Origin: Blastocladiella emersonii ATCC 22665
Taxonomy: Eukaryota; Fungi; Blastocladiomycota
Reading direction: 5' to 3'
Length of the DNA: 64,000 bases
Assembly: GCA_025594325.1 (NCBI GenBank)
Contig: JANHCV010000003.1
Coordinates: forward strand, 1,674,001-1,738,000
The notes below the pieces were generated by a model. That model saw nothing but the letters and a program-made list of their open reading frames with translations, was not told where the DNA came from and did no database searches. Both the position numbers and the translations under genes were made by a program. How positions within the stretch are numbered: the stretch's first letter is position 1; every line of letters starts with the position of its first letter. This document shows, piece after piece, positions 1 through 12,328 of the stretch.

Positions 1-1555
1 TGCGCGTCGTCGGGTCGTAGCAGTTTTGCTTGACGAAGCCGCAGTCGACGACAAAGACGATGCCCGGAATCGTGATCGAGGTCTACATGATGAGAAGTAG
101 TCGGTCAGTCAGCTGTTGTGAGCGGAAACTCGTGCGGGGGAGTCGGGCGGACCTGCGCAATGTTCGTCGCAAAGACGATCTTGCGGTATCCCGGGCGCGC
201 GGGCCGGAACACGGCGCGCTGCTCGACGGTCTCGAGCGAGGCGTGGATGCCGAACACGTCCATGCCGATGATGCGGGGGTGGGTCTCGGACTCGCCGTCG
301 CGCTCGCCGCGCTGACGGTGGTGCACGACGTCGCGGTCGTACCGCAGCTGCTGGTCCAGGCGCTTCATCTCGTTGACGGCTCGGTCAATCTCCTGCGAGC
401 CGCACAGGAAGACGAGGATGTCGCCCGGCCGCTCGTGCTTGTGGATGTGCAGCGCCGTGTCGATGGCGCGGTCAACGTAGGTCGACTGCAGCGTGGCCAT
501 TTTGGTGTTGCGCGAGTAGAGGATCTCGACGGGGTACGGGCGGCCGGGGATCTGAAAGATGGGGCACTCGTGGAAGAAATCGGAGAACTTTTCGACATCT
601 ACCCGGTCGCATCGTGTCGTGTGAACAGACGAGGGGGTGCACGTCGGGGATGGGAGCGTACCGAGAGTCGCGCTCATGACGAGCAACTTGATGTCCTTGC
701 GCTTCTGGAGGCACTGTTTGAGCAGCCCGAGCAGAATGTCGGTGCCCACAGTTCGCTCGTGCGCCTCATCTAAAAGGTTGTGACAGGGAAGGTAAGAGCG
801 CCGAGTGGGAGGATAGGAGACCAGTTGGCGTACCGATAATGACGACCGAGTGGGCCGAGAGCGTGTCGTCGTCAATGATCTCGCGGAGGAGCACGCCGTC
901 GGTGACGTAGCGGATCTGGGTCGATGTCGAGACTGCCGACTCGAAGCGGATGGCGTAGCCCACGCGCTCGCCGACGTGGCCGCCCATCTCAGCGGCTACG
1001 CGCTTTGCGTTGGAGATGGCCGCGATGCGTCTGGACGATATCTTAGTGAGCGACGGCGTAGTAGAGTGGTTCGGGGAGCTCTAACGCACCGAGGCTGGGT
1101 GACGACGATGCGCGCATCCGGCTGGTCGTCGAGAATGTACTGCGGGATCTGCGTCGTCTTGCCCGACTACGTGCAGAGCGTCGCGGGAGTGAGCAAGAGA
1201 ACACCGAGAGTTGATGCGGCCGTCGAGCTCGTACACCAGTCTCGCCTAGAAGGAGAGCGAGGTGTCAGCTCTTGCACGGCTGAGCGGACGAGCTAGGTCG
1301 CTACTCACCGACGATAACGAGCAGGTTGTGCTCGCGAATTGCGTCCACGAGATCCTTGCGGAATCCCGCGATGGGGAGCTCGGAGCGGTCAGCGTCAACC
1401 GCTGCGACCGGGGAGGGCTCGCGGCGCGGCCGCTCGGCTGGGACGCGGTCGTCGCGACGAGCCCTCGGCCGGTCGCGCGAGCGGCTCCGAGAGCGACGAT
1501 CACGCTCGTTACGTTGCCGGTGGTCTCTTGACCGGCTCCGGTTTCTCTGCTTCAT
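1..1555 (-). CDS. DEAH-box RNA helicase (Prp22/DHX8/DHX40-like family), multi-exon, runs off the left edge
   Basis: RS-rich N-terminus, then LPIAGFRKDL, Walker A GETGSGKT (assembled over an 11-nt exon at 1235-1245), TQPRR, VGYAIRFE, YVTDGVLLRE, DEAHER, MSATL, GDILVFLCG, RKIVFATNIA. Confidence 0.92.
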
Positions 1556-3266
1556 AGTGGGTGGTGGTGAGGGAGGGCAACCGCGAGCGACTTTGCGCGG
1601 CTTGGCCTGCGCGCGTCTCCGAGTTGAGTAAGCTGATGCGAGTCAACGCTGAGGCGCGCGTCGGTGTTCGTCGCGGCGGTCCTCAGTCCTCCAACCATCC
1701 GCCTCCTCGAAGCCGGGACGGCTAATGCTCGGTCTCAAGTGATCAAACGAGTGCTGTACTATCGACGCCGCGTCGGGGTTGTTCGCGGAGGGGACTTGCT
1801 GTAAGGGAGGAAGCACCCGCACACACTCCTTGACCGACACTTCGAGCGCGGTCGCAGGAAAACTCAAGCCAGCCAGCCACCAAGGGAACTTCTTTCCACC
1901 CGGGTGAGACGACCCCCACCTCCTCGGCCGAGACCTTTCGGCGGTTCCGAGACCGTTGACGTGGCCGACGATTAGTGATGAGACACGCGCGGTCGCGAGG
2001 CACTCGCCTTCAGACTCCGCCGTCCCGAGGCCCACGACGGCGCGGGAACGTGTACTCTCAACTCAACTCGCACCCGCATCCATGAAGCCCAAGCAAACAA
2101 TCACCACATCAAGGGCCGCGACCAGCACAAGCTACAGCCGTCTCGACGACTTGCCTACAGCCATGCGAGTATGAGTGCGCGACCAGGCGCCGCCGTCGTC
2201 GCAACTCACCTACCATGACGAGGACCGCGCTTCGTTCCCGTCCAGCAGACCCGCTACGAGTCTTTACAGAACAGCTCTACCCTTACTTTCGACGGCCGCT
2301 GCCGAGTCTTTGAGTGCCGCAGACAGTGACTGCTCGGCCGGGTCCATTACACCCGGGTCGGTGGTCAGCACCTAGCTCGAGTCGCAAGATTGCCTTGCCA
2401 TCACCTTCGGCGGGCCGGTTCCGGTCTCCACGTTGCGGGCGGTCCATCAACCCACTCATTTCCCACATCTGTTCCATGGCACACGGCGGCTGGGAGCGGT
2501 GGACGAACGGGTTGAAGCTTGCTCGAGCCCCTGTCATCAGCCCCCCTGCTGTCATCGACTGTGGATGTGGCTGAGCCAGTCACGGGATGCGCCTCAGCCC
2601 TCGCTCCCGCCCGCCGGCTGCCCTGAGCGGGCTTTGGTCGCAGCCGGCCTCGCGCTCCGGCATTGACAAGTCCTCCTGTCGAATTCGCCGTTTCCTCTCG
2701 GTGTTCGTCCAAACCGCATCCACGAATCGCAATGCCGCCTAAGTTGGGAGGCGCTCGTCACGGTTAGCGCGCCCGCTGCTCCTCACTCAAGCAGCAGTAA
2801 GCTTCCATCGCATCCATCGCGTTGCCATTAGTCTTATCAACGACTCAAGTATCAGCGTTCCATGGCGGCGGTTCAGCTAAGCAGCTTTACGCGGATCGGG
2901 AGGGACGAAGTGGCGCCGAGCGCGCGAGTCGCTGTCAGCTGACGCAAGCGCGAGCTTCGCTTGAGTCGCTTGAGGCTGCGCGAGGGGCCCATCCCTTGGC
3001 TCACGATTCGACCTGAACGATATGGAAGTCTTTTACGCACGGTCACTCACGATGCTGACCCACCGCAAGAAGTAGCAAAGACGGGGCAACTTACATATAT
3101 GAATTCACATGCAAAATTCTCCCAACACTGCCTCGCCCCGCTCCACGACATGCACGCTAGTCCCCCGTCATCGCGAGCGCCCTTGACGCTGGTGGATGGC
3201 TAGGCATCTACTCGAGTCGTTGGCAGAACGGTTAGCTTCAATCACTGTGAGGGGAACGCGAGCAGA

Positions 3267-3730
3267 TCACGTACCAAGGACACTTGGAGAGAGCGCACAC
3301 ACAATCAGCGACCGGCCAGTGTTGTGCTTGGCTGCGTCCGTGCGCTTGGCTGGGCGCCGGATCATGATTGTCGCGCCCTCGACCGGCGGCGCCACGTTCC
3401 ACGCTTCGCCCATGAACGACGCGTTGGACACGACCTTGGTGAGGTAGGGCAACACGAAGCACGAGTGAGCGCCGAGGCTGTACGACGCCTCGTAGTTGTC
3501 GGTGCTTGCGGTCGCCTCATTGCTGGACCCATCGCCGCGCATGACTTCGTTGCGCGTACCGAGAATCATCCCAACGCTGGCGCGCACCGAGTACCCAGCA
3601 TGAATCGCAACGCGAAGCACGTCCTCGGCGCAGAAGAGTGACGAAGTGCTGATCATACCGCCAAGCTGGACCGTCGTCTCCAAATCAACTTGCTCGGGTT
3701 CAAAAGCAGCGTGCACCTCATGCTTTGCAG
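3267..3730 (-). pseudogene. C-terminal half of an intein-like (Hint + LAGLIDADG) ORF split by the Harbinger insertion
   Basis: ISTSSLFCAEDVLRVAIHAGYSV resembles intein endonuclease block E. FMGEAWNVAPPVEGATIMIRRP...RSLIVCA resembles Hint blocks F/G. Joins in frame to 6984-7313 once the element and one TAA are removed. Confidence 0.6.
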
Positions 3731-4003
3731 TAAGGGCCCGTTTGGTTCCGGGGTGAATCAGGTGGATCAATCGATTTTACACGGTCCGGTGTTCACCCAG
3801 CTGAAACGTGGCATTTTCACCCCGTCGTGTTCATCGCGGCGTTTGGTTCAACCCCCGGGTGAGCTGAATGGAACCCTCGTCGCTGAATCGCCCGTCTGCT
3901 CGCCCCCGAAACCTTCAGGCTGTGCTCCCCGGCCTATATAAACGCCGTTTTCCTCCAAAGTAACTCGCTCTCTCTCCCCCGTCCTCCCTCAAAGCCGAAA
4001 AGA

Positions 4004-5133
4004 ATGGCTCCCCCGTCAAGCAAAAAGCGCGCTGGCCGTACGGCCATGTCCATCGAGGAGATCGTCAAGAACGTGCCCGAAATCCCGCCGCCGCCCGCCG
4101 ATAGCGACGAGGATGCAGATGACGACGCTGCTGGGAGCGACGGCAACGCTGCTGTCACGCCGACCAACCCGCTGCCGCCCGTGACCATCGCCAAGCCAAG
4201 CAAGCGCAAGGCCAGTGGCAGCAAGGCCAGCAGCGGCAAGGCCAGCGGCGGCAAGGCCACCTTCTGCTCCGCGTCGACCAACTTCCTCCTCGACCACTTC
4301 TGCAGCCTCGCTGACGACGGCGTGCTCGGCGACAGCAACACGCTCAAGGCCCAGCACCGTGTGTCGATTGCCCAGGCCCTGTCGGACGAGTTCAACATGC
4401 AGTTTACGGCGGAGCAGGTCAAGAACCGCGTGACATACGTACGCTTTGTCTTGCGGACACGCGTCAACCGTAGCGCTAACAACGTCAGCGTTCGGCTCCA
4501 GCTTCGCACTTGTTTTCGCGCCGTAAAACGGCTTCTGTCGTACTCGGGCAACGGCTGCACCTGGAATGAGGGTGAGTGCACGGTCGACGTGCCAGAGGAG
4601 TTCTGGAACGATCTCTCGGTACGTTTGTTCAATATCGTTACGCGTCAACTCGCGGCGAGCTAACAGCGCCTGGCCTGCTTCAATTGTAGGCAGAGCTCAA
4701 GGAGGAGCTGACTGCGGGCTGCAAGCCCTTCCCGTACTACAAGAAGGCCAACATGCTGTGGGGCAGCTCGACCGCCACCGGCAAGTACTCGCACCTCGAG
4801 CAGGACGGCAAGGAGTCTGGTGACGTGGAAGGTGTTGATGGTCAAGACGACGCGGCCCCCGCCAGCAAGCGCAGCCGCACTTCGGACAGCAGCTCGCGTC
4901 GCCTCTCGGACTCGGAATTCCTCATGGGCATCAAGGAGGTGTTCCAGAGCGTCGCGACCGCCGACTCCAAGCCCGTTCTGACCGCCGCACTTGAATGGGT
5001 CCAGGACGCGTACAATGACAATGAAGAGTACCAGATCGACGTCGCCACCCGCCTGACCGAGGATCAAGCGCTTCGCGTCATGGCCGTGTCCGAATCGAAG
5101 CGCAAGCGCGTCCTCGAGTTTTTCATTCAGTAG
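4004..5133 (+). CDS. Harbinger ORF2, Myb/SANT-like DNA-binding protein; introns 4439-4501 and 4619-4689
   Basis: Spliced product reads FTAEQVKNRVTY|LRTCFRAVKRLLSYSGNGCTWNEGECTVDVPEEFWNDLS|AELKEELTAGCKPFPYYKKANMLWGSSTATG, the typical PIF ORF2 Myb/SANT pattern. Both introns have GTACG donors and AG acceptors. Confidence 0.85.
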
Positions 5134-5446
5134 CTCTCTCGCACATGTCCCCCTCCCCTCGCGTTGCTTCCTGGCCTTGTTCTCGCCCATTTGTGTCCAA
5201 TACATCTGGCTTTGTGTCCATCGTATCTTCAATCGTTACCCTTCGCTCGAAAATGACGCGACTCGTTGAGAAACGCGTGGTTCTCAAAGTGTCTCGCACG
5301 TCACGTGATTGATCGACGCGTCTCCACCGATGCGTTCTGACCTCAGCGACGCGTCAAATCATCTGGAATCGCTTATCTAACGTTATAGTACTTGACAAAT
5401 CAGTATATTACAGCATGCATGCGGGTACAACAATTATTTCGCGCCT

Positions 5447-6764
5447 TCAAAGACGGGTCCCACGAGCGGCCATGACGCGCCTGTACTCGGTCCAAAGAAC
5501 ATTTGCGACGCGGTTCCGAAGCGAGATACCGCGCTGACGAGCTCCGTCCAGCGAGGCCTCGAGGACAGCGGCCTCGTCGTCCTCCTCGTTCTCGTCGTCC
5601 AGGGGCTCGCGCCCACGTACTGGCGCCTCACGCGCCGCGTCCCGCGCGCGCCGGAGCTCCGTCTCGGCGTCGCGAAAGAAGGCGTCGCCGCCTTGGTTCC
5701 ACTTGTTGATCATGTTGTGCAGCGTGCAGAGCGCGTACACAAGCTTGACTTGAGTCTTGATTGGGTAGGCCGCGCCAATCGAGAGGACGCGGAACCGCTT
5801 CTTGAGCACGCCAAAGATATGCTCAATGGAGTTGCGGAGCGACGCGTGACGCAGATTGAAAAGCTCTTCGCGGTTCTTAACTCTACGTACGTTGGTGAAG
5901 CAGATGAGATGGCGCCAACGTGATGGTCATGGCAGTGAGAACGTACCCATCCTTGCCGCGGGCAAACTCGCGAAGATGATAGCGGGTGCCGCTGAAGGGC
6001 ACGATGATGGACGTGCGGTTTGCGTAGCCGCCGTCGGCGAGGTAGAAGCGGCCGGCGGGGATCTTGAACCCACGGGCGAAGGCGTCCGAGAGCACGCGCG
6101 AGTCGTGCGCCTTGCCCTCCCACCCTGCGAGAACGTAGGTGAAGTTCAAGTCAAAGTCGCAGGCAGCGAGGACATTTGAGGAGATGGTCCCCTTGCGGTT
6201 TCGGAACGAGTCGTGAAGCTTGGCGGGCACAACAAACGGGATGTGCGTTCCGTCAAGCGCGCCGACCGCGTTCTGGAACGGAGCGTATTTCGGGTCGTGG
6301 GCGATGCGCTCATGCACGGGCGTAGAATCGGACGGCTGGACAATGAACTCGGGCATCAGGCGGTACAGAGCGTCGAGCACCTGCTTCAGAACCCTGGACG
6401 CGGTCTCGCCAGAAATTTGGAACCGCTCCCTGAGGTTGCGGTTGGTGCTGCCCTCGCCGGCCATGACAAGAAAAACCATGAAGCGCGCCTCGACGGACAG
6501 CTCGCGGCCGTCGGTGAGAAGGCCACGGTCGCGGAACAGGCGGCAGATGGCCTTGAAGGTCTCGCGGGGCATACGGGCGATTTCCGAAAAACGCGTTTTG
6601 CTGTTGCACGTCAGCAGCTCTTGAACCCACGACTCGCCAGAAAGCGTGGACGTGCGGATAGGCTCCCACGAGCGGCGCTCGTTGCGCGCAGCGAGACGTC
6701 GCAGGAGAGCGAGGGCGGCCGTGAGCATGAGGCCGCGCAGCTTGCGGTTGTATCCCTTGCCCAT
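5447..6764 (-). CDS. Harbinger/PIF DDE transposase (DDE_Tnp_4-like), about 417 aa; intron 5883-5946
   Basis: GALDGTHIP, FRNRKG, NVLAACDFDLNFTYVLAGWEGKAHDSRVL, FYLADGGY, then after splicing KNREELFNLRHASLRNSIEHIFGVLKKRFRVL and LCTLHN. Frame is uninterrupted once the 64-nt intron is removed. Confidence 0.95.
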
Positions 6765-6983
6765 GTTGTTTGAGGGCTCGAGAACACGATGCGTGAGGTT
6801 AGGTGTTGATTCGTTGCAATAAGTGCGGCTGCAAAGAGGTGGGAAAGATTTTATTGCGGGGGGGGGAGGGGCGTTCATCCAGCGGGGCGTTTGGTTCGCA
6901 CGGCCGCTGAGATGAACGGGGGTGAGGTGAAACGTGGCAACTTTTTCAGCTGATCCACCTGATCTGAACCAAACGGACCCTAA

Positions 6984-8108
6984 GACGCGTGAGGCGTTCA
7001 TTCTGGCGGGCCTGGGTCCCATCGGCGTAGTGCAAGCCCGCAAGAAGGTAATCACACTGTACAGCGTCAAGCTCAGAGAAGGAGAAACCCAGCTGCCACT
7101 TCACCGACTTGACAAAGTTGGTAATTTCGGCCTTATAGGTGAACAGCGACGTGTCGGTGCCTGCGTCGGCAGCCACAGCAGGAAGTGGAAGGCCGTCGTC
7201 AATGATAGGCAATCTGGCATGTACCCGATGACGTGTGTCCTTGCCGTTCTCATTGCGACCATGAACATACTTGTGCACAAAGCCGTTGAGGAAAAAGCGG
7301 TTCCACGCCTCGTTCAGGATGGTGTAGCGACGAACCGGAGTCCCATGTGTAGCATCCGTCTGTACGAGGAAGCCAGGTTCGCCTGCATCACAAGTAATTG
7401 TCTTAGTGGCGCGTCAGGTAGCAAGACATGTGCAGGAACAAGCAGGGCCCGCGTTGCAAGCAGGTCTACACAATTGTTGTCGTTGCCCAAAAGACGCACA
7501 AAGCGTTGCGCGCCGCGGTGCCGCACAATGTTCCTGAGCCCGATGCGGTAATAGACAAGGCGGTTAGGGTGTGCAGGCGCGCCACATGCAATACCGATAT
7601 CGTGGTGCGTAATCAGGTACGTCACAAGCGCAATATAGTCCAGGAACCCGCGCGACGTGAGGATCTCGGTCCCGTCTGTAGGGAAGTCCGGGAACAAGCG
7701 CGCCAAGACTGTTGATTGCGTGACATCGGACTCCTCAAGCGGAACTTCACGCAGGGGCATCGCGTGTATAGTTGGGCCATTACCTGCAAGAGGAAGCGCT
7801 GCAACTTCTTCCGGCGAGATACGCTTCTTTCGTGCAGGGGCAGGTTGGATAATGACAGGCCGTGGGACAAGCGGGTGCACAGGAGCGATTTGAAGAGGGT
7901 CAAGTGGTGCCTGAGCGGGTGGCGGGATACGCGGTACAATTCGAGCATTTTGAGCGCGGCCAAGTTCGCTGTCCCGAGGTGGCACCACAGGTCGCAGTGA
8001 AGGAGAAGCGCCGAAATCTACATCCATGCGATCTGAGCGAGCGCCATGGAGAAGACCACGACCGCGAACGCAAAGTGGTGGTTCCAGGATACTGACATCA
8101 ACATCCAT
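6984..8108 (-). pseudogene. N-terminal half of the intein-like ORF (Hint-N and LAGLIDADG-like motif), frameshifted near 7314-7400
   Basis: DFPTDGTEILTSRGF (7644-7688) resembles intein block A, VDLLAT resembles block B, and LAGLHYADG (7018-7044) resembles the LAGLIDADG helix. Stop at 7314-7316 with continuation in the -1 frame. Confidence 0.6.
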
Positions 8109-8863
8109 GCGAGCAGGTTCGGTGGCGCGGCGAGTGCGAGGAGGTTGAGTCGTTACGGCGTGCAGCGGTGGAAGTGGAACAGTAGGGCTGATAGTTGAGT
8201 GGCGTGGGCTGATGGTGCGATCAAGCTCACGCGTGGGAGCGGGTGCTGGAACGCGAGGTTTGGCAACAATAGGCGGGGTAACTGGACGATCTCGAGCGTG
8301 TCAGGGAGCGCTGATGAGAGGAAACGCACGCGTATGTAGCGGTGCAATGGGAAGCGCTGGAAGCGGTGCAACGGGAAGCGCTGGAAGCGGGTCTGAAGGA
8401 CTGCTCGATTCTACGTGGCCAAGACCGTGGCCAAAAGGCTGCTGCTGCCGCTTGTGTTGCATTGGCGGAAGCGGTTCAGTAGCAAGATTATGAAGCCTGG
8501 TCAAGCTCCGGGTCATCCGCAGCGACGGCCGCAAAGGATCCGAATGCGGCGACGCTGGGGATGGCGGTGATAGTGGAGCTGGCAGCGGCCGCCCGCGCTT
8601 GCCTTTCCATTGGTTTTGCATAGACATGATTGTGAATTGTTACAGCAAGAGCAGGAGCGGTGATCATAAAAAAATGCCTTGATAAACCAAGGGTCACAGC
8701 CATGTGGGCGACTTTTGGCAACAAACTGGCGCACTGAGTGTTTCCGCGTTACAACAATACCTCCCACACTGCTGTCAGTCAGGGAGTGTCATTGTCTCAC
8801 AGTGGCTCCTGCCCGCTTCAATCGTTTGACGAACTGACTCAGCGAGTCAGCGCGAATCGATGT

Positions 8864-8891
8864 GAGACGCGAGACGCGAGACGCGAGACGC
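8864..8891 (+). repeat. (GAGACGC)x4 tandem repeat
   Basis: Directly visible in the sequence. Confidence 0.9.
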
Positions 8892-9550
8892 GACGCGCCG
8901 CCGACGCCACCTCACATGACCGATCAGTTGAACTTTGGCAGCTCATGTGTGGCGGCACCTGAGCACGCTCACCCCGCCACTGTCACGTTCCGTTCTGTAG
9001 TTGTGGATTGTCGCCATGCACTTGCATGAGCCATGTAATAAATAATGAAGTTGGACTCGGTGCAACAGGGCTTGCGGCTAACCGCACCGTCCAAGTGCGA
9101 GCGGCTCACGCTGCGCGTGCTGCGGGAGCAGCAACGTCAACGGTCGCTGCGTGCGGCACCTGGTCCAAGGGTTGTCTGTGCCGCGACCCCGCGGCACTTC
9201 GCGCAACTTGGTCAATTTGGTGTGTTTGTACATAGCAGGGAAGACGGTGGGAGGGTGGGCGGGGCGGGGGCCGTCACCAGTTCATTCACTCGAGCTTTAA
9301 TTTATCAATCGTGCATCGTAGCTTGCGAGTTGGCTTGCGAGTCGGCTTGCGAGAAGTGCAGGAATCGGCGGCGCCGAGGCGAGGGTAGTGGCGGAGCACC
9401 GTGGCCGGCCCTCGCGACTCACCGATCAGTCGCTGAGTCGCGAGGGACACCGGCCGACCGACCCGTGCCGCGCCGTGCGCTCCCCTCCGCCTTCCCTCAC
9501 AATTATCCCGCTAGAGACGAAATCGCGGAGAATAAAAGAGCATAAACGGT

Positions 9551-12328
9551 TTATCCATTGTACGGAGGACGGGTAATCCGGTCAAAATGCTCGCGGAACT
9601 CGTCCCACCCGCGGAGTCCCTCCTCGTGCGGGATCGACTGCACCGCCAGCTTGACCTGCTCGCCCACGACGGCATCTGCAGCACGTGCACTTGCGACCTT
9701 GGGCGGGGCAAAGGACGGCGCGTACTTTTCGATCTCAGCCTCGACGTCGGCTTTGGTCAGCAGCTCGGCCAGCACCGCGTCCGTGTCCTCGTCGCCGTCG
9801 GCGCCCGCGCAGCAGCTATCGTCGTCGTCGTCGTCGTCGTCTTCATCATCGTCGACGGCGCCCGAGACCGCGGCCGCGCACTCGGTGTCGGATTCAGAGT
9901 CGCTCGGGTCGGGCGAGCGGACGCGCGCGACGGCGACGGGCACGGCGCAGTTGACGGCCGAGAATCGGTCAAGGACGGACTGCAGGATCTTGGAGCGATC
10001 GTCGACTACATGACATACAACGTAGAGTCAGTTTCGGTACGCGCGACCGCGATGCGCACTGGTTCCGCGTACCGCGCGTGTTGAGGATGACGGCCGTCGC
10101 GGGTTCCGGTGCGCGGGGCGAAATGTAGTTGAGGTGCGCGGGCGAGATAGCGGCGACGAGCGCGACCTGGGCCACGAACTTGAGCGCGGCGAACGGCGTC
10201 GCGTCGATCATCCGCAGCGTCGCGGCGACCATCTTGTCGCGTATGTCGGGAACGCGGAGGCCGAGCATCGGGATCGCGCGCCCAAACTTCTGGAAGACAG
10301 TGGCGGGGATGGTGACGCGGGCGGCGAGCGGGTCAATGTCCGCGAGGGACTCGGACGCCTGGATCGCGGCCTGCAGCACGCGGTACTCCTTGCGGACGGC
10401 CTTGCCCTTGCCCGCGCGCGGACCGGTTGCGTGGACCGCGTCGCGGCGCATGTACATGAGCAGCGGCGTGACCTTGGCGTAGGCCATGAACCGCCGCCAC
10501 AGCGGGTCCGAGTTGCCACCCTTCTTGAGCCACGCCGGGTACTCGGCCTTGCCAGCGTAGACGGTCTTGAGGTACCACTCGCGCGCGTTGTTGAGCAGCG
10601 ACGCGTGCAGCGAGTGGATCAGGGCCGCCATGATCTCGAGCTTGGTCGTCTCGGGATGGACGAAGACCTTCTCGCACTTGAGCGCGTCGCGGAGGTTGTC
10701 GGCGACGCACGCCAGGAAGAGCACGATCTCGACGAGCTGGTCGGCCTCGACGGCGAGCGACGACGTGGACCGGCCGTGCGACGGGTTGAGGTGCCGGTCG
10801 AGCAGGCGGCGGTAGTCGTCGACATCGCCCACGATCTGCATCACCTCGGCGAGGACACCGGCGTCGTCTGGCCCGTCGGCGAGGATCTGGGCCACGAACC
10901 GATCGAGTAGGTCCGGGTTCGTGAGCAGGATCTCGATGCACTTGTACACGAGCGCGCCGAGCAGGTGCGTCTCGGGTTCGGGGCCCGTCGGATCCACGAC
11001 GCCGAGGAGCGAGTGGATGTGCGCGCGGAGGAACTCGATGACGCGTGCACCGACGGACGACGGCGACGACGCGGCGATCTGCGACTCGGACGACGCGGCG
11101 ATCTGCGACTCGACGACGCCTGCTTCTTACTCTTCTTCGACCTGTTCTTCTTCGACTTGCCACCCTTTTGCCCTGTGGGGATTGCGGCGGCGGGCTCGGG
11201 GGCGAGCACGACGTCCTCGTCGGACAGGTCGTCGATTTCGGTCCGGTCCGAGTTCATGATGGGCGCAGCGGCGAGTGCGTCGTCCTCGTCCGATAGGTCG
11301 TCGATCTCGACCTGCGCCTTCTCGCGCGGAGGGGATGACGGCAGGTACGGCGGGTCGATGATTTCGACCTCGGGCGGCGTGTCGCGCGGGTGAGGCAGCG
11401 TCTGGTCGACGCTCATGGGCTCGGGCACGGGCTCGCCCGACGGAACGCGAGACGTCAGGGCCACGATGCCCGCGAAGTGCTCGTCCGCCTGGATACGCTG
11501 TGGCGGCAGCGAAACGGTGCCCTCGAGGTCGCGCGACACGGCGTGCGACGGTGGAAGCGGCAGCGTCTCGGCCGTCGCGATCTCGAGCGTCTTGGAGGAG
11601 AGCGACGGCGGCAAGGGCGGCGTGAGCAGCGCGTCGTCGCGAGCGCTCGCGACCGAGATCGGATCGAGCGGCACGGGCCGATCGCGTTGAGTGCGGGCCG
11701 ATGATGGGGATGAAGCGGCGACGGAGACCGTGGCCGTGGGGCTGATGCTGCGGCGGCCGGCGCGAGTGGAACTAGTCGCGCGGCGAGCGACGCTGGCGCG
11801 GCCGCGCTTCGAGTGCATCGAGTGGACCACGGGCAACGCGAGGGCCGCCGTCTGCTCGGCGTGCTCCATGCTCATCTTGCGCACGAGCCCGTCCCAGTTC
11901 CGCTGGGCCCAGTCCCAGACGTGCATCGAGTCAAAGAGCATGGCCTCGTCGGCGGGCTGGAAGATGACGCGATAGCCGTTGGGGTCGTTGACGTAGAAGG
12001 TGTTAGACGAGCCGTGCATGCGAGCGGGCTTCGAGGCGACGCCGTTGCCGTCAAACGACTTGAAGTAGCGCCACGCGGCGAGCTGAGTTGCAGGGAGGAG
12101 GGGAGCGGCGGGTTGTGCATTCGGACGGTTGGGCAGCGGGACGGCGCCGGCGGCAGCGGCAGCGAGCTGCGAGGCAACTGAGCCACACAGCGAGACGGTC
12201 GACTCGGCCGTGGCCGCGCGGCGGACGGGCCCGGCGTGCTCGTCGTAGGGGTCGACAAACTCCTCGTGGTGGTTGTAGTGGTCGGCCTCGGCGTATGTAT
12301 AGTCATCGAAATAAATGTCCCGTTCCAT
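9551..12328 (-). pseudogene. Large orphan gene (about 900 aa if repaired), intron 10006-10072, one frameshift near 11120
   Basis: ORFs 10841-12328, 9969-10997 and 9551-9943 have host-like GC3-rich codons. The last two are joined by a canonical 67-nt intron. The first two need a 1-nt shift with no plausible intron. No family recognised. Confidence 0.55.

What the first reader, a model, noticed from the sequence alone, without database searches (positions are those of the whole stretch)
3267..8108. Hidden free-standing intein-like LAGLIDADG ORF, split in-frame by the Harbinger
Removing 3734-6983 gives ..QNERLTRL|TAKHEVH.., one reading frame. The repaired protein has block A-like DFPTDGTEILTSRGF, block B-like VDLLAT, LAGLHYADG, block E-like ISTSSLFCAEDVLRVAIHAGYSV and block F/G-like MGEAWNVAPP..IMIRRP..RSLIVCA. 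The splicing residues look lost: Asp at the Cys1 position, no block-B His, no terminal Asn. The endonuclease is shortened (about 40 aa between the two motifs), and no conserved host extein is evident. This suggests a nuclear, extein-less intein-derived element, a poorly described class in fungi.
Basis: partly seen in the sequence, partly recalled or inferred. Interest (0 to 1): 0.75.

Follow-up and report, generated by a model that had tools for sequence, protein, structure and literature searches.

The report
Decayed escaped-intein gene split by transposon
This stretch of the Blastocladiella emersonii genome holds a broken copy of a gene that began as an intein (a self-removing protein insert carrying a DNA cutter), now stands alone without a host protein, and was recently split by a jumping gene; one intact sister copy elsewhere makes it a rare yeast-HO-like "escaped intein" of separate origin.

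Summary
The core observation holds. A PIF/Harbinger transposon occupies 3734-6980, with 15-nt inverted ends and a TTA target duplication. Removing it plus one TTA rejoins one reading frame (…RLTRL|TAKHEV…).

A profile built only from 99 canonical inteins hits exactly three of the window's 876 six-frame segments. They lie in collinear order:
- N piece, 7317-8108;
- M piece, 6982-7398;
- C piece, 3270-3731.
The M and C pieces abut seamlessly across the insertion site.

All splicing residues are gone: Cys1 is Asp, the block-B His is Leu, the terminal Asn is Ala and the +1 residue is Leu. No extein is present.

- The N piece is in a different frame, with a stop at 7314-7316.
- About 125 codons, including the first LAGLIDADG motif, are deleted. 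LAGLHYADG is therefore the second motif. The copy was most likely already a pseudogene before the Harbinger arrived.

The genome (B. emersonii ATCC 22665) holds one intact paralogue on contig 2, NCBI H9P43_007679. It has both catalytic Asp, and its predicted fold matches PI-SceI-type inteins. At least four copies are decayed.

Similar stand-alone, non-splicing relatives occur in marine and other metagenomes.

This scan had already noted the intact paralogue on other DNA (s1-259957). The kind is HO/WHO-like but of independent origin. Whether it is mobile is untested.

The parts
7317..8108 (-). N piece. A 264-codon ORF holding about 140 residues of unassignable leader, then Hint blocks A to B. 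Block A is DFPTDGTEILT, with Asp at the Cys1 position (7686-7688). Block B is LATRAL, with Leu at the His position (7443-7445).
   Evidence: ORF. Canonical-intein profile positions 8-80, E 2e-9. A1 profile positions 16-97, E 1.8e-7. Alignment to the RPB2 intein start CFPTEDHEILT. No Pfam hit and no word-search relative.
7314..7446 (-). Deletion scar and frame break. The N frame stops at TGA 7314-7316, and the M frame is open from about 7446. About 125 codons, the start of the endonuclease domain with the first LAGLIDADG motif, are missing here.
   Evidence: profile gap 81-207 or 98-223; the intact paralogue and the contig-1 copy carry YGYWLSDG / YGYLLSDG in this interval; the contig-2 1042k copy lacks the same segment.
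6982..7398 (-). M piece. The middle of the endonuclease domain, with the second LAGLIDADG motif LAGLHYADG (7018-7044, catalytic Asp kept). It ends at the Harbinger insertion point.
   Evidence: Profile positions 208-292, E 3e-11. 62% identical to the contig-2 1042k paralogue. Alignment.
6981..6983 (.). Target-site duplication TTA (left copy as read on the minus strand).
3734..6980 (.). Autonomous PIF/Harbinger transposon, 3247 bp. TIRs lie at 3734-3748 and 6966-6980. The DDE_Tnp_4 transposase is on the minus strand (roughly 5447-6760, probably with an intron). The Myb/SANT-like ORF 4004-4663 is on the plus strand.
   Evidence: I2. DDE_Tnp_4 E 8e-12, HTH_Tnp_4, and Myb_DNA-bind_3 E 4e-5; at least 25 full-length copies at 98-100% identity and at least 15 internally deleted copies, all with the same ends.
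3731..3733 (.). Target-site duplication TTA (right copy).
3270..3731 (-). C piece. It holds block H (ISTSSLFCAEDVLRVAIHAGYSV), block F (EAWNVAPP..TIMIRRP) and block G (GRSLIVCA). Ala stands at the terminal-Asn position (3294-3296) and Leu at +1. The stop codon is at 3267-3269.
   Evidence: Profile positions 291-404, E 2e-11. A1 profile positions 339-463, E 8.5e-13. Alignment.

Best explanation
The locus is a dead member of a small Blastocladiella emersonii gene family. The family descends from a homing-endonuclease-bearing nuclear intein of the eukaryotic 'N|CFPxxDHEILT ... IVGN|T' clade.

Shown: before the family diversified it lost protein splicing. Position 1 is Gly or Asp instead of Cys. 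The block-B His is Leu. The terminal Asn is Ala. The +1 residue is Gln, Leu or His, not a nucleophile. The family also lost its host protein, so members are stand-alone genes.

Shown: one member (contig 2, H9P43_007679) is still intact. It has a Hint fold, a two-motif LAGLIDADG domain and both catalytic Asp.

Inferred: the intact member probably still binds, and perhaps cuts, a specific DNA site. It would do so either as a selfish free-standing homing endonuclease or as a domesticated one.

The window copy went further down the usual path of such elements:
1. Shown: a deletion of about 125 codons removed the first LAGLIDADG helix and left a frame break.
2. Shown: codon usage decayed.
3. Shown: very recently a young, active Harbinger inserted at a TTA. 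The site lies in the variable loop just after the second LAGLIDADG helix.

Inferred: the window copy encodes no working protein.
For: Organism:
- Contig 2 has the same length (1,735,363) as the contig that carries NCBI protein H9P43_007679 of B. emersonii ATCC 22665.
- The assembly has 21 contigs, as published.

Homology to inteins:
- The intact paralogue hits inteins in RPB2, ribonucleotide reductase, PRP8, oxoprolinase and other hosts.
- 213 library hits have E<1e-3.
- Of 108 full-length units, nearly all have Cys1, the block-B His, terminal Asn/Gln and +1 Cys/Ser/Thr. The Blastocladiella protein has G, L, A and Q at these positions.

Window pieces:
- Only the three pieces hit the canonical-only profile, and they are collinear.
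- The residue substitutions show in the alignment.
- The uninterrupted paralogue on contig 2 at 1042k reads straight through the insertion point: RVQRI-AERKQ against RLTRL|TAKHE.

Fold of the intact paralogue:
- The model has pTM 0.83.
- Foldseek's top matches are the TliVMA intein (E 3.8e-10), PI-SceI, PhoVMA, PI-PfuI and then I-DmoI.

Family census:
- One copy is intact. Decayed copies lie at the window, C2:1042k, C1:2963.6k and C20:41-42.7k.
- Copies are only 68-70% identical in DNA and share no flanks.
- No canonical intein of this clade was found in the genome.

Decay of the window copy:
- The first motif is missing and there is a frame break.
- GC3 is 0.53-0.75 against 0.87 in the intact gene.
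- The C piece evolves near-neutrally against its paralogue: p(pos1+2) 0.42 against p(pos3) 0.46.

Young Harbinger.
Against: - Both halves of the window copy are still long open frames (328 codons; 155 plus 169 codons). That is unexpected after long neutral decay in a sequence with about 3% stop-like triplets.
- The M piece shows purifying-type divergence: p(pos1+2) 0.28 against p(pos3) 0.56.
- A 32-nt GT..AG stretch at about 7361-7392 would join the N and M frames if spliced. It looks too short for an intron, and I could not test it.
- No expression data were available.
- Endonuclease activity of the intact member is inferred only from conserved motifs and a predicted fold.
Confidence: 0.85

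Rival explanations
1. Until the Harbinger arrived, the window copy was a working gene for a truncated, single-LAGLIDADG protein. Such a protein might act as a homodimeric nuclease or a DNA-binding factor, made from the M plus C frame or from a spliced N-M-C message.
For: - The frames are long and open.
- Both the window copy and the C2:1042k copy lack motif 1, yet both keep an open M-C frame of about 300 codons.
- The M piece shows constraint-like divergence.
- The second-motif Asp is kept.
Against: - In the C2:1042k paralogue the only Met in the M-C frame lies near its C-terminal end (AMLMIRHP), so that frame has no usable start.
- The N part of that paralogue has three TAG stops and a frameshift.
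- The C piece is near-neutral and GC3 has decayed.
- The Hint fold would lack its middle.
- The word search found no database protein matching the N-piece ORF.
Confidence: 0.1
2. The family, including its intact member, is not a selfish homing element. It would be a host-domesticated nuclease or DNA-binding protein, as HO or WhiA became, and the other copies are ordinary dead duplicates.
For: - There is a single intact copy with high GC3 (0.87), like host genes.
- No flanking repeats or duplicated target fragments were found at any copy.
- The branch is long, meaning a changed constraint.
- An extra C-terminal tail is annotated in the NCBI model.
Against: - One intact copy plus at least four dispersed, highly diverged, decaying copies is the usual picture for homing endonuclease genes and for WHO elements (PMC7282813).
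- Both catalytic Asp are kept.
- The intact copy sits inside a 3.2-kb intron of an ABC transporter gene. Several paralogues have that junction in one long open frame, which looks like an insertion.
Confidence: 0.3
3. It is a genuine, still-splicing intein of an unusual class, sitting in an unrecognised host gene.
For: - Some inteins lack Cys1 (class 2 and 3) or end in Asp or Gln (established knowledge).
- About 140 unassigned residues precede block A.
Against: - All four key positions are non-functional at once: Asp or Gly at position 1, Leu for the block-B His, Ala for the terminal Asn, and Leu, Gln or His at +1.
- The frame stops 8 codons after block G.
- The leaders of the different copies are unrelated to each other and to any family.
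Confidence: 0.01
4. The motif resemblances are chance matches in GC-rich, ORF-rich DNA.
For: Pfam finds no Hint or LAGLIDADG domain in any piece. Spurious ORFs abound in this genome.
Against: Three collinear hits at E 2e-9 to 2e-11, and no other hit among the window's 876 segments. Paralogues and the fold evidence agree.
Confidence: 0.005

Closest known systems
HO endonuclease and WHO elements of Saccharomycetaceae (Coughlan et al. 2020, eLife, PMC7282813)
   Same: An intein-derived Hint plus LAGLIDADG protein encoded as a stand-alone gene with no exteins and no splicing. The family consists of very divergent genes and pseudogenes (compared).
   Different: - Independent origin. The nearest relatives are canonical nuclear inteins of PRP8, RPB2, oxoprolinase and similar hosts, not VDE.
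- There is no C-terminal zinc finger.
- The block G strand is retained, with Asn replaced.
- Copies are dispersed, not clustered next to one host gene.
- No duplicated host-gene fragment was seen.
- The lineage is Blastocladiomycota.
- Cleavage and homing are untested.
Canonical nuclear inteins with LAGLIDADG endonucleases (PI-SceI/VDE; PRP8 and RPB2 inteins of fungi and protists: PMC1635734, PMC5784728, PMC10710043)
   Same: The same block order, A-B-(C-D-E-H)-F-G, and the same fold. Full-length homology at E 1e-17 to 1e-35.
   Different: Not embedded in a host protein, and every splicing residue is replaced. The window copy also lacks block C, the first LAGLIDADG motif.
Stand-alone non-splicing relatives found here in metagenomes (P0007/P0158 cluster from Tara Oceans, P0010, P0013, P0031)
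   Same: In these proteins of 499-582 residues the intein-like domain is nearly the whole protein. All have Gly at position 1, no block-B His, and Asp, Lys or Ala instead of Asn. Both LAGLIDADG Asp are kept.
   Different: - Only 26-29% identical to the Blastocladiella protein, and their organisms are unknown.
- A clade of the Blastocladiella protein with P0007 and P0010 is not rejected (p-AU 0.62).
- A single clade of all five is borderline (p-AU 0.052).
PIF/Harbinger DNA transposons
   Same: A DDE_Tnp_4 transposase plus a Myb/SANT-like second gene, short TIRs and a 3-bp TWA duplication.
   Different: Nothing unusual. It is simply the disrupting agent here.

Membership tests
Intein (protein-splicing element) | Hint-fold splicing domain with blocks A, B, F and G | tested here: met
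   The window pieces match a canonical-intein profile at blocks A-B and F-G. The intact paralogue's model matches the TliVMA, PI-SceI and PI-PfuI inteins.
Intein (protein-splicing element) | Catalytic set: Cys/Ser at position 1, block-B Thr-x-x-His, terminal Asn (or Gln/Asp), and Cys/Ser/Thr at +1 | tested here: not met
   The window copy has Asp, T-R-A-Leu, Ala and Leu. The intact paralogue has Gly, T-P-A-Leu, Ala and Gln.
Intein (protein-splicing element) | In-frame insertion in a host protein (N- and C-exteins) | tested here: not met
   - The frame stops 8 codons after block G.
- The leader has no Pfam hit, no word-search relative and no similarity to the other copies' leaders.
- The intact paralogue has no family hit in its flanks.
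LAGLIDADG homing endonuclease (two-motif, monomeric) | Two LAGLIDADG helices, each with an acidic catalytic residue | tested here: not met
   The window copy has only the second motif, LAGLHYADG, because the first is deleted. The intact paralogue meets the feature: LYGYWLSDG and LQGLRFADG.
LAGLIDADG homing endonuclease (two-motif, monomeric) | Site-specific DNA cleavage | not testable with these tools
   This needs an in vitro or in vivo cleavage assay of the intact paralogue.
HO/WHO family | Intein-like domain without exteins, encoded as its own gene | tested here: met
HO/WHO family | C-terminal Cys-X-X-Cys zinc-finger domain fused to the intein-like region (PMC7282813) | tested here: not met
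   No Pfam domain was found, and no CxxC cluster appears in the tail of the NCBI model or in the window copy.
HO/WHO family | Descent from the VDE/VMA1 intein lineage | tested here: not met
   All sequence relatives are inteins of the PRP8, RPB2, oxoprolinase and similar hosts clade, or stand-alone forms of it. PI-SceI is matched only by fold, at 11-13% identity.
HO/WHO family | Sits beside its target gene together with a duplicated fragment of that gene | tested here: not met
   The window flanks are unique in the genome. There is no ABC-transporter fragment inside the intron that holds the intact copy. Diverged fragments could have been missed.
PIF/Harbinger transposon | DDE_Tnp_4 transposase, Myb-like partner ORF, TIRs and a 3-bp TWA duplication | tested here: met
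   The TTA duplication is read directly.

The most novel reading that the evidence does not exclude
Nuclear inteins of this eukaryotic clade may repeatedly escape their host proteins and persist as stand-alone homing endonuclease genes: here in a zoosporic fungus, and in marine and other uncultured eukaryotes. They would keep both catalytic Asp while discarding every splicing residue. In B. emersonii the surviving active copy would ride antisense inside a spliceosomal intron of an ABC-transporter gene. That would be a new niche for a homing element, with RNA splicing of the host gene replacing protein splicing. The window copy and three others would be the burnt-out remains of earlier invasions.
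Probability: 0.2. Interest if true: 0.8.

Novelty: new variant of a known kind. Interest (0 to 1): 0.5.

Why it matters
Stand-alone intein-derived endonuclease genes were known only from HO and the WHO elements of a few budding-yeast genera. [quoted passage not shown]

A second, independently derived family in an early-diverging fungus suggests the step from intein to free-standing endonuclease is a recurrent evolutionary route, not a yeast oddity. The family has one intact member, several decayed members and look-alikes in environmental eukaryotes.

The intact member is a candidate new rare-cutting nuclease. It also gives a testable case for how homing elements change niche.

The window copy itself is a pseudogene. 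Its value is as evidence of the family's birth-and-decay history, and as a clean example of a very recent Harbinger insertion.

Tried and rejected
- Pfam scans of the three pieces, the intact paralogue and the stand-alone relatives found no Hint or LAGLIDADG hit. Only 3 of 30 relatives reach a weak LAGLIDADG_3 match.
- Sequence and profile searches of PDB chains found nothing meaningful. Only the fold search worked.
- The word search with the N-piece ORF was blank.
- The exact look-up of the NCBI protein's contig was blank because the window's own genome is withheld there.
- The WHO-like architecture was not found. Flanks of the copies share no DNA. The window flanks are unique apart from a simple repeat. 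No host-exon fragments lie in the intron around the intact copy.
- An unfiltered tblastx gave only GC-rich noise.
- The AU test on the full 104-row tree did not finish in three runs. A 34-row test was used instead.
- Ka/Ks methods mostly failed by saturation, so only raw codon-position distances are quoted.
- A giant-virus origin was considered because the first RPB2 hit is only 36-40% identical to the fungus's own polymerases. It was set aside because the clade's hosts are typical eukaryotic nuclear genes such as PRP8, UPF1, NOG1, Nop and Ufd2. It is not excluded.
- The joined, Harbinger-excised protein was never handed to a search or fold tool, because it has no reference. The pieces were searched apart, and the uninterrupted and intact paralogues served instead.


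Full report
**What is there**

The region 3267-8108 holds three minus-strand open frames and an inserted transposon. The insert runs from 3734 to 6980.
- Its ends are 15-nt inverted repeats (pair I2).
- It is flanked by TTA at 3731-3733 and 6981-6983, read directly.
- It carries a DDE_Tnp_4 transposase (E 8e-12) and a Myb_DNA-bind_3 ORF (E 4e-5). It is therefore an autonomous PIF/Harbinger.
- The genome holds at least 25 further full-length copies at 98-100% identity with exactly the same ends. At least 15 more copies carry one internal deletion.

The family is therefore young and probably active, and this insertion is recent.

**The frame across the insertion**

Removing 3734-6983 joins CTT (6984-6982) to ACT (3731-3729).

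Two independent results back this up:
- A paralogue on contig 2 (C2:1042.7-1043.6k, locus L002) is uninterrupted. It reads through the same point with similar residues.
- In a profile built only from canonical inteins, the upstream piece ends at position 292 and the downstream piece starts at position 291.

I did not hand the joined sequence to any search or fold tool. The pieces were searched apart by reference.

**Is it intein-derived?**

Pfam sees nothing in the pieces. The evidence comes from an intact paralogue and from canonical inteins.

The genome has an intact paralogue at G000:C2:656.4-659k. It is NCBI protein H9P43_007679 of Blastocladiella emersonii ATCC 22665. Matching contig lengths identify the assembly, and it has 21 contigs as published (PMC9730499).

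That protein is homologous over its whole length to canonical inteins in RPB2, ribonucleotide reductase, PRP8, oxoprolinase and other hosts. In the 1.84-billion-protein library, 213 hits have E<1e-3.

Its model (pTM 0.83) matches endonuclease-bearing inteins first: TliVMA at E 3.8e-10, then PI-SceI, PhoVMA and PI-PfuI. It then matches the LAGLIDADG enzyme I-DmoI.

I built a profile from 99 canonical inteins, leaving out all Blastocladiella and stand-alone sequences. I ran it against all 876 six-frame segments of at least 40 residues in the window. Only three segments hit, and they are collinear:
- 7317-8300: profile positions 8-80, E 2e-9.
- 6949-7413: positions 208-292, E 3e-11.
- 3270-3776: positions 291-404, E 2e-11.

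Chance is excluded.

**Splicing residues and exteins**

Of 108 full-length units of this clade, nearly all have Cys at position 1, the block-B His, a terminal Asn or Gln, and Cys, Ser or Thr at +1.

| Position | Window copy | Intact paralogue |
|---|---|---|
| Cys1 | Asp (DFPTDGTEILT) | Gly |
| Block-B His | Leu (LATRAL) | Leu |
| Terminal Asn | Ala (SLIVCA) | Ala |
| +1 nucleophile | Leu | Gln |

The window copy's frame stops 8 codons after block G. The roughly 140-residue leader before block A matches no family, no database protein and no other copy. The element is therefore not an intein by function or by context. It is an intein derivative encoded on its own.

- The three pieces are not one frame. 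The N piece ends at TGA 7314-7316, and the M piece is in another frame that is open from about 7446.
- Profile positions 81-207 are absent. By alignment with the intact paralogue they include the first LAGLIDADG motif: LYGYWLSDG in the intact copy and YGYLLSDG in a contig-1 copy. LAGLHYADG (7018-7044) is therefore the second motif, and ISTSS.. is the following block.
- The C2:1042k copy lacks the same segment between similar flanking residues. The deletion probably predates their separation.
- GC3 is 0.53-0.75 in the window copy against 0.87 in the intact gene. The C piece differs from its paralogue almost equally at all codon positions.

Together these make a pseudogene the best reading. Three points count against it. 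The open frames are long. The M piece shows constraint-like divergence. A 32-nt GT..AG stretch could formally join the N and M frames, though it is too short to trust.

**The family**

There is one intact copy and at least four decayed ones:
- the window copy;
- C2:1042k, with three TAG stops and a frameshift in its N part;
- C1:2963.6k, which keeps motif 1 but has stops, frameshifts and a rearrangement;
- C20:41-42.7k, which is split over three frames and has lost its second-motif Asp.

The copies are only 68-70% identical in DNA and share no flanks.

All copies end in ..CA instead of ..GN. Splicing was therefore lost before the family spread. No canonical intein of this clade was found in the genome.

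**Relatives elsewhere**

Five lineages in the library are stand-alone and non-splicing:
- the Blastocladiella protein;
- a 28-member Tara Oceans cluster (P0007/P0158), called as complete genes with separate neighbours;
- P0010;
- P0013;
- P0031.

All have Gly at position 1, and all keep both LAGLIDADG Asp. Many canonical inteins have lost one of these Asp.

On the 105-row tree, well-supported branches force at least three changes of this state. On a 34-row tree, a single clade of all five is borderline (p-AU 0.052). A clade of the Blastocladiella protein with P0007 and P0010 is not rejected (p-AU 0.62). One to three escapes are therefore possible.

**Comparison with what is known**

HO and WHO (PMC7282813) are the known stand-alone intein derivatives. 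The present family works like them in architecture: no exteins, no splicing, and a family of divergent genes and pseudogenes. It is not a member, for four reasons:
- it has no zinc finger;
- it does not descend from VDE;
- its copies are not clustered beside one target gene;
- no duplicated target fragment was seen.

I found no paper linking Blastocladiella and inteins. Two surveys of eukaryotic inteins hold none of the terms I searched for stand-alone forms. The genome paper does not mention inteins or transposons.

**Earlier notes of this scan**

The scan had already flagged the intact paralogue on other DNA as a free-standing non-splicing intein derivative (s1-259957). My independent tests agree with that note. 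The Harbinger (s1-276446) and the surrounding 12.5-kb island (s1-276354) were also noted.

**Mechanism, with its status**

- Shown: descent from an intein; loss of the splicing residues and of the exteins; deletion of motif 1; the frame break; the recent Harbinger insertion.
- Inferred: the window copy is inert. The intact member is a site-specific DNA binder or cutter. The family history is that of a selfish homing endonuclease gene that invades, fixes and decays.
- Not shown: any cleavage, expression or mobility.

Noticed in passing
L027 (G000:C2:655000-664999), about 1155-4345: The intact paralogue (plus strand) lies antisense inside a roughly 3.2-kb intron of an ABCC/MRP-type ABC transporter gene. 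The intron falls between the end of the second membrane domain (..VALNYSG) and the exon encoding ..SVERIRKY...GIVGR. A second small intron splits the Walker A motif. Several ABCC paralogues have this junction in one long open frame, so the big intron looks like an insertion.
   Followed up: partly
window 3734-6980 and genome-wide: The Harbinger family has at least 25 near-identical full-length copies. At least 15 further copies share one internal deletion (element positions 222-1024). This points to an active autonomous element with a non-autonomous derivative.
   Followed up: partly
L004 / P0001 (G000:C2:658.3k): The NCBI model H9P43_007679 places an intron right after ..NGVVPHT. That removes the conserved last strand GRPVLVCA, which is kept in all paralogues. 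The 3' part of the model is doubtful.
   Followed up: partly
L026 (G000:C20:34000-43999), 7038-8705 and 9516-9935: A fifth, very divergent family copy is split over three frames. It lies directly downstream of the mitochondrial ATP synthase alpha-subunit gene on the same strand. The C2:1042k copy lies just upstream of ribosomal protein P2.
   Followed up: no
L030-L034, and proteins P0007, P0010, P0013, P0031 and P0158: Complete stand-alone, non-splicing intein-like genes occur on marine (Tara Oceans) and other metagenome contigs. They have Gly at position 1 and Asp, Lys or Ala for the terminal Asn. Both LAGLIDADG Asp are kept. Their organisms are unknown.
   Followed up: partly
proteins P0006, P0033, P0055, P0083 and P0122: Some library proteins carry two or more intein units of this clade in one polypeptide. 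This recalls the massive intein content reported for Anaeramoeba (PMC10710043).
   Followed up: no
window 8861-8893: A short repeat here recurs in tandem arrays with about 21-nt spacing on contigs 21 and 4.
   Followed up: no
window 108-1642, minus strand: A DEAH-box RNA helicase gene with an Arg/Ser-rich N-terminus starts near 1555-1642. It runs away from the intein-like pseudogene, which therefore lies upstream of it on the same strand and not inside it.
   Followed up: partly
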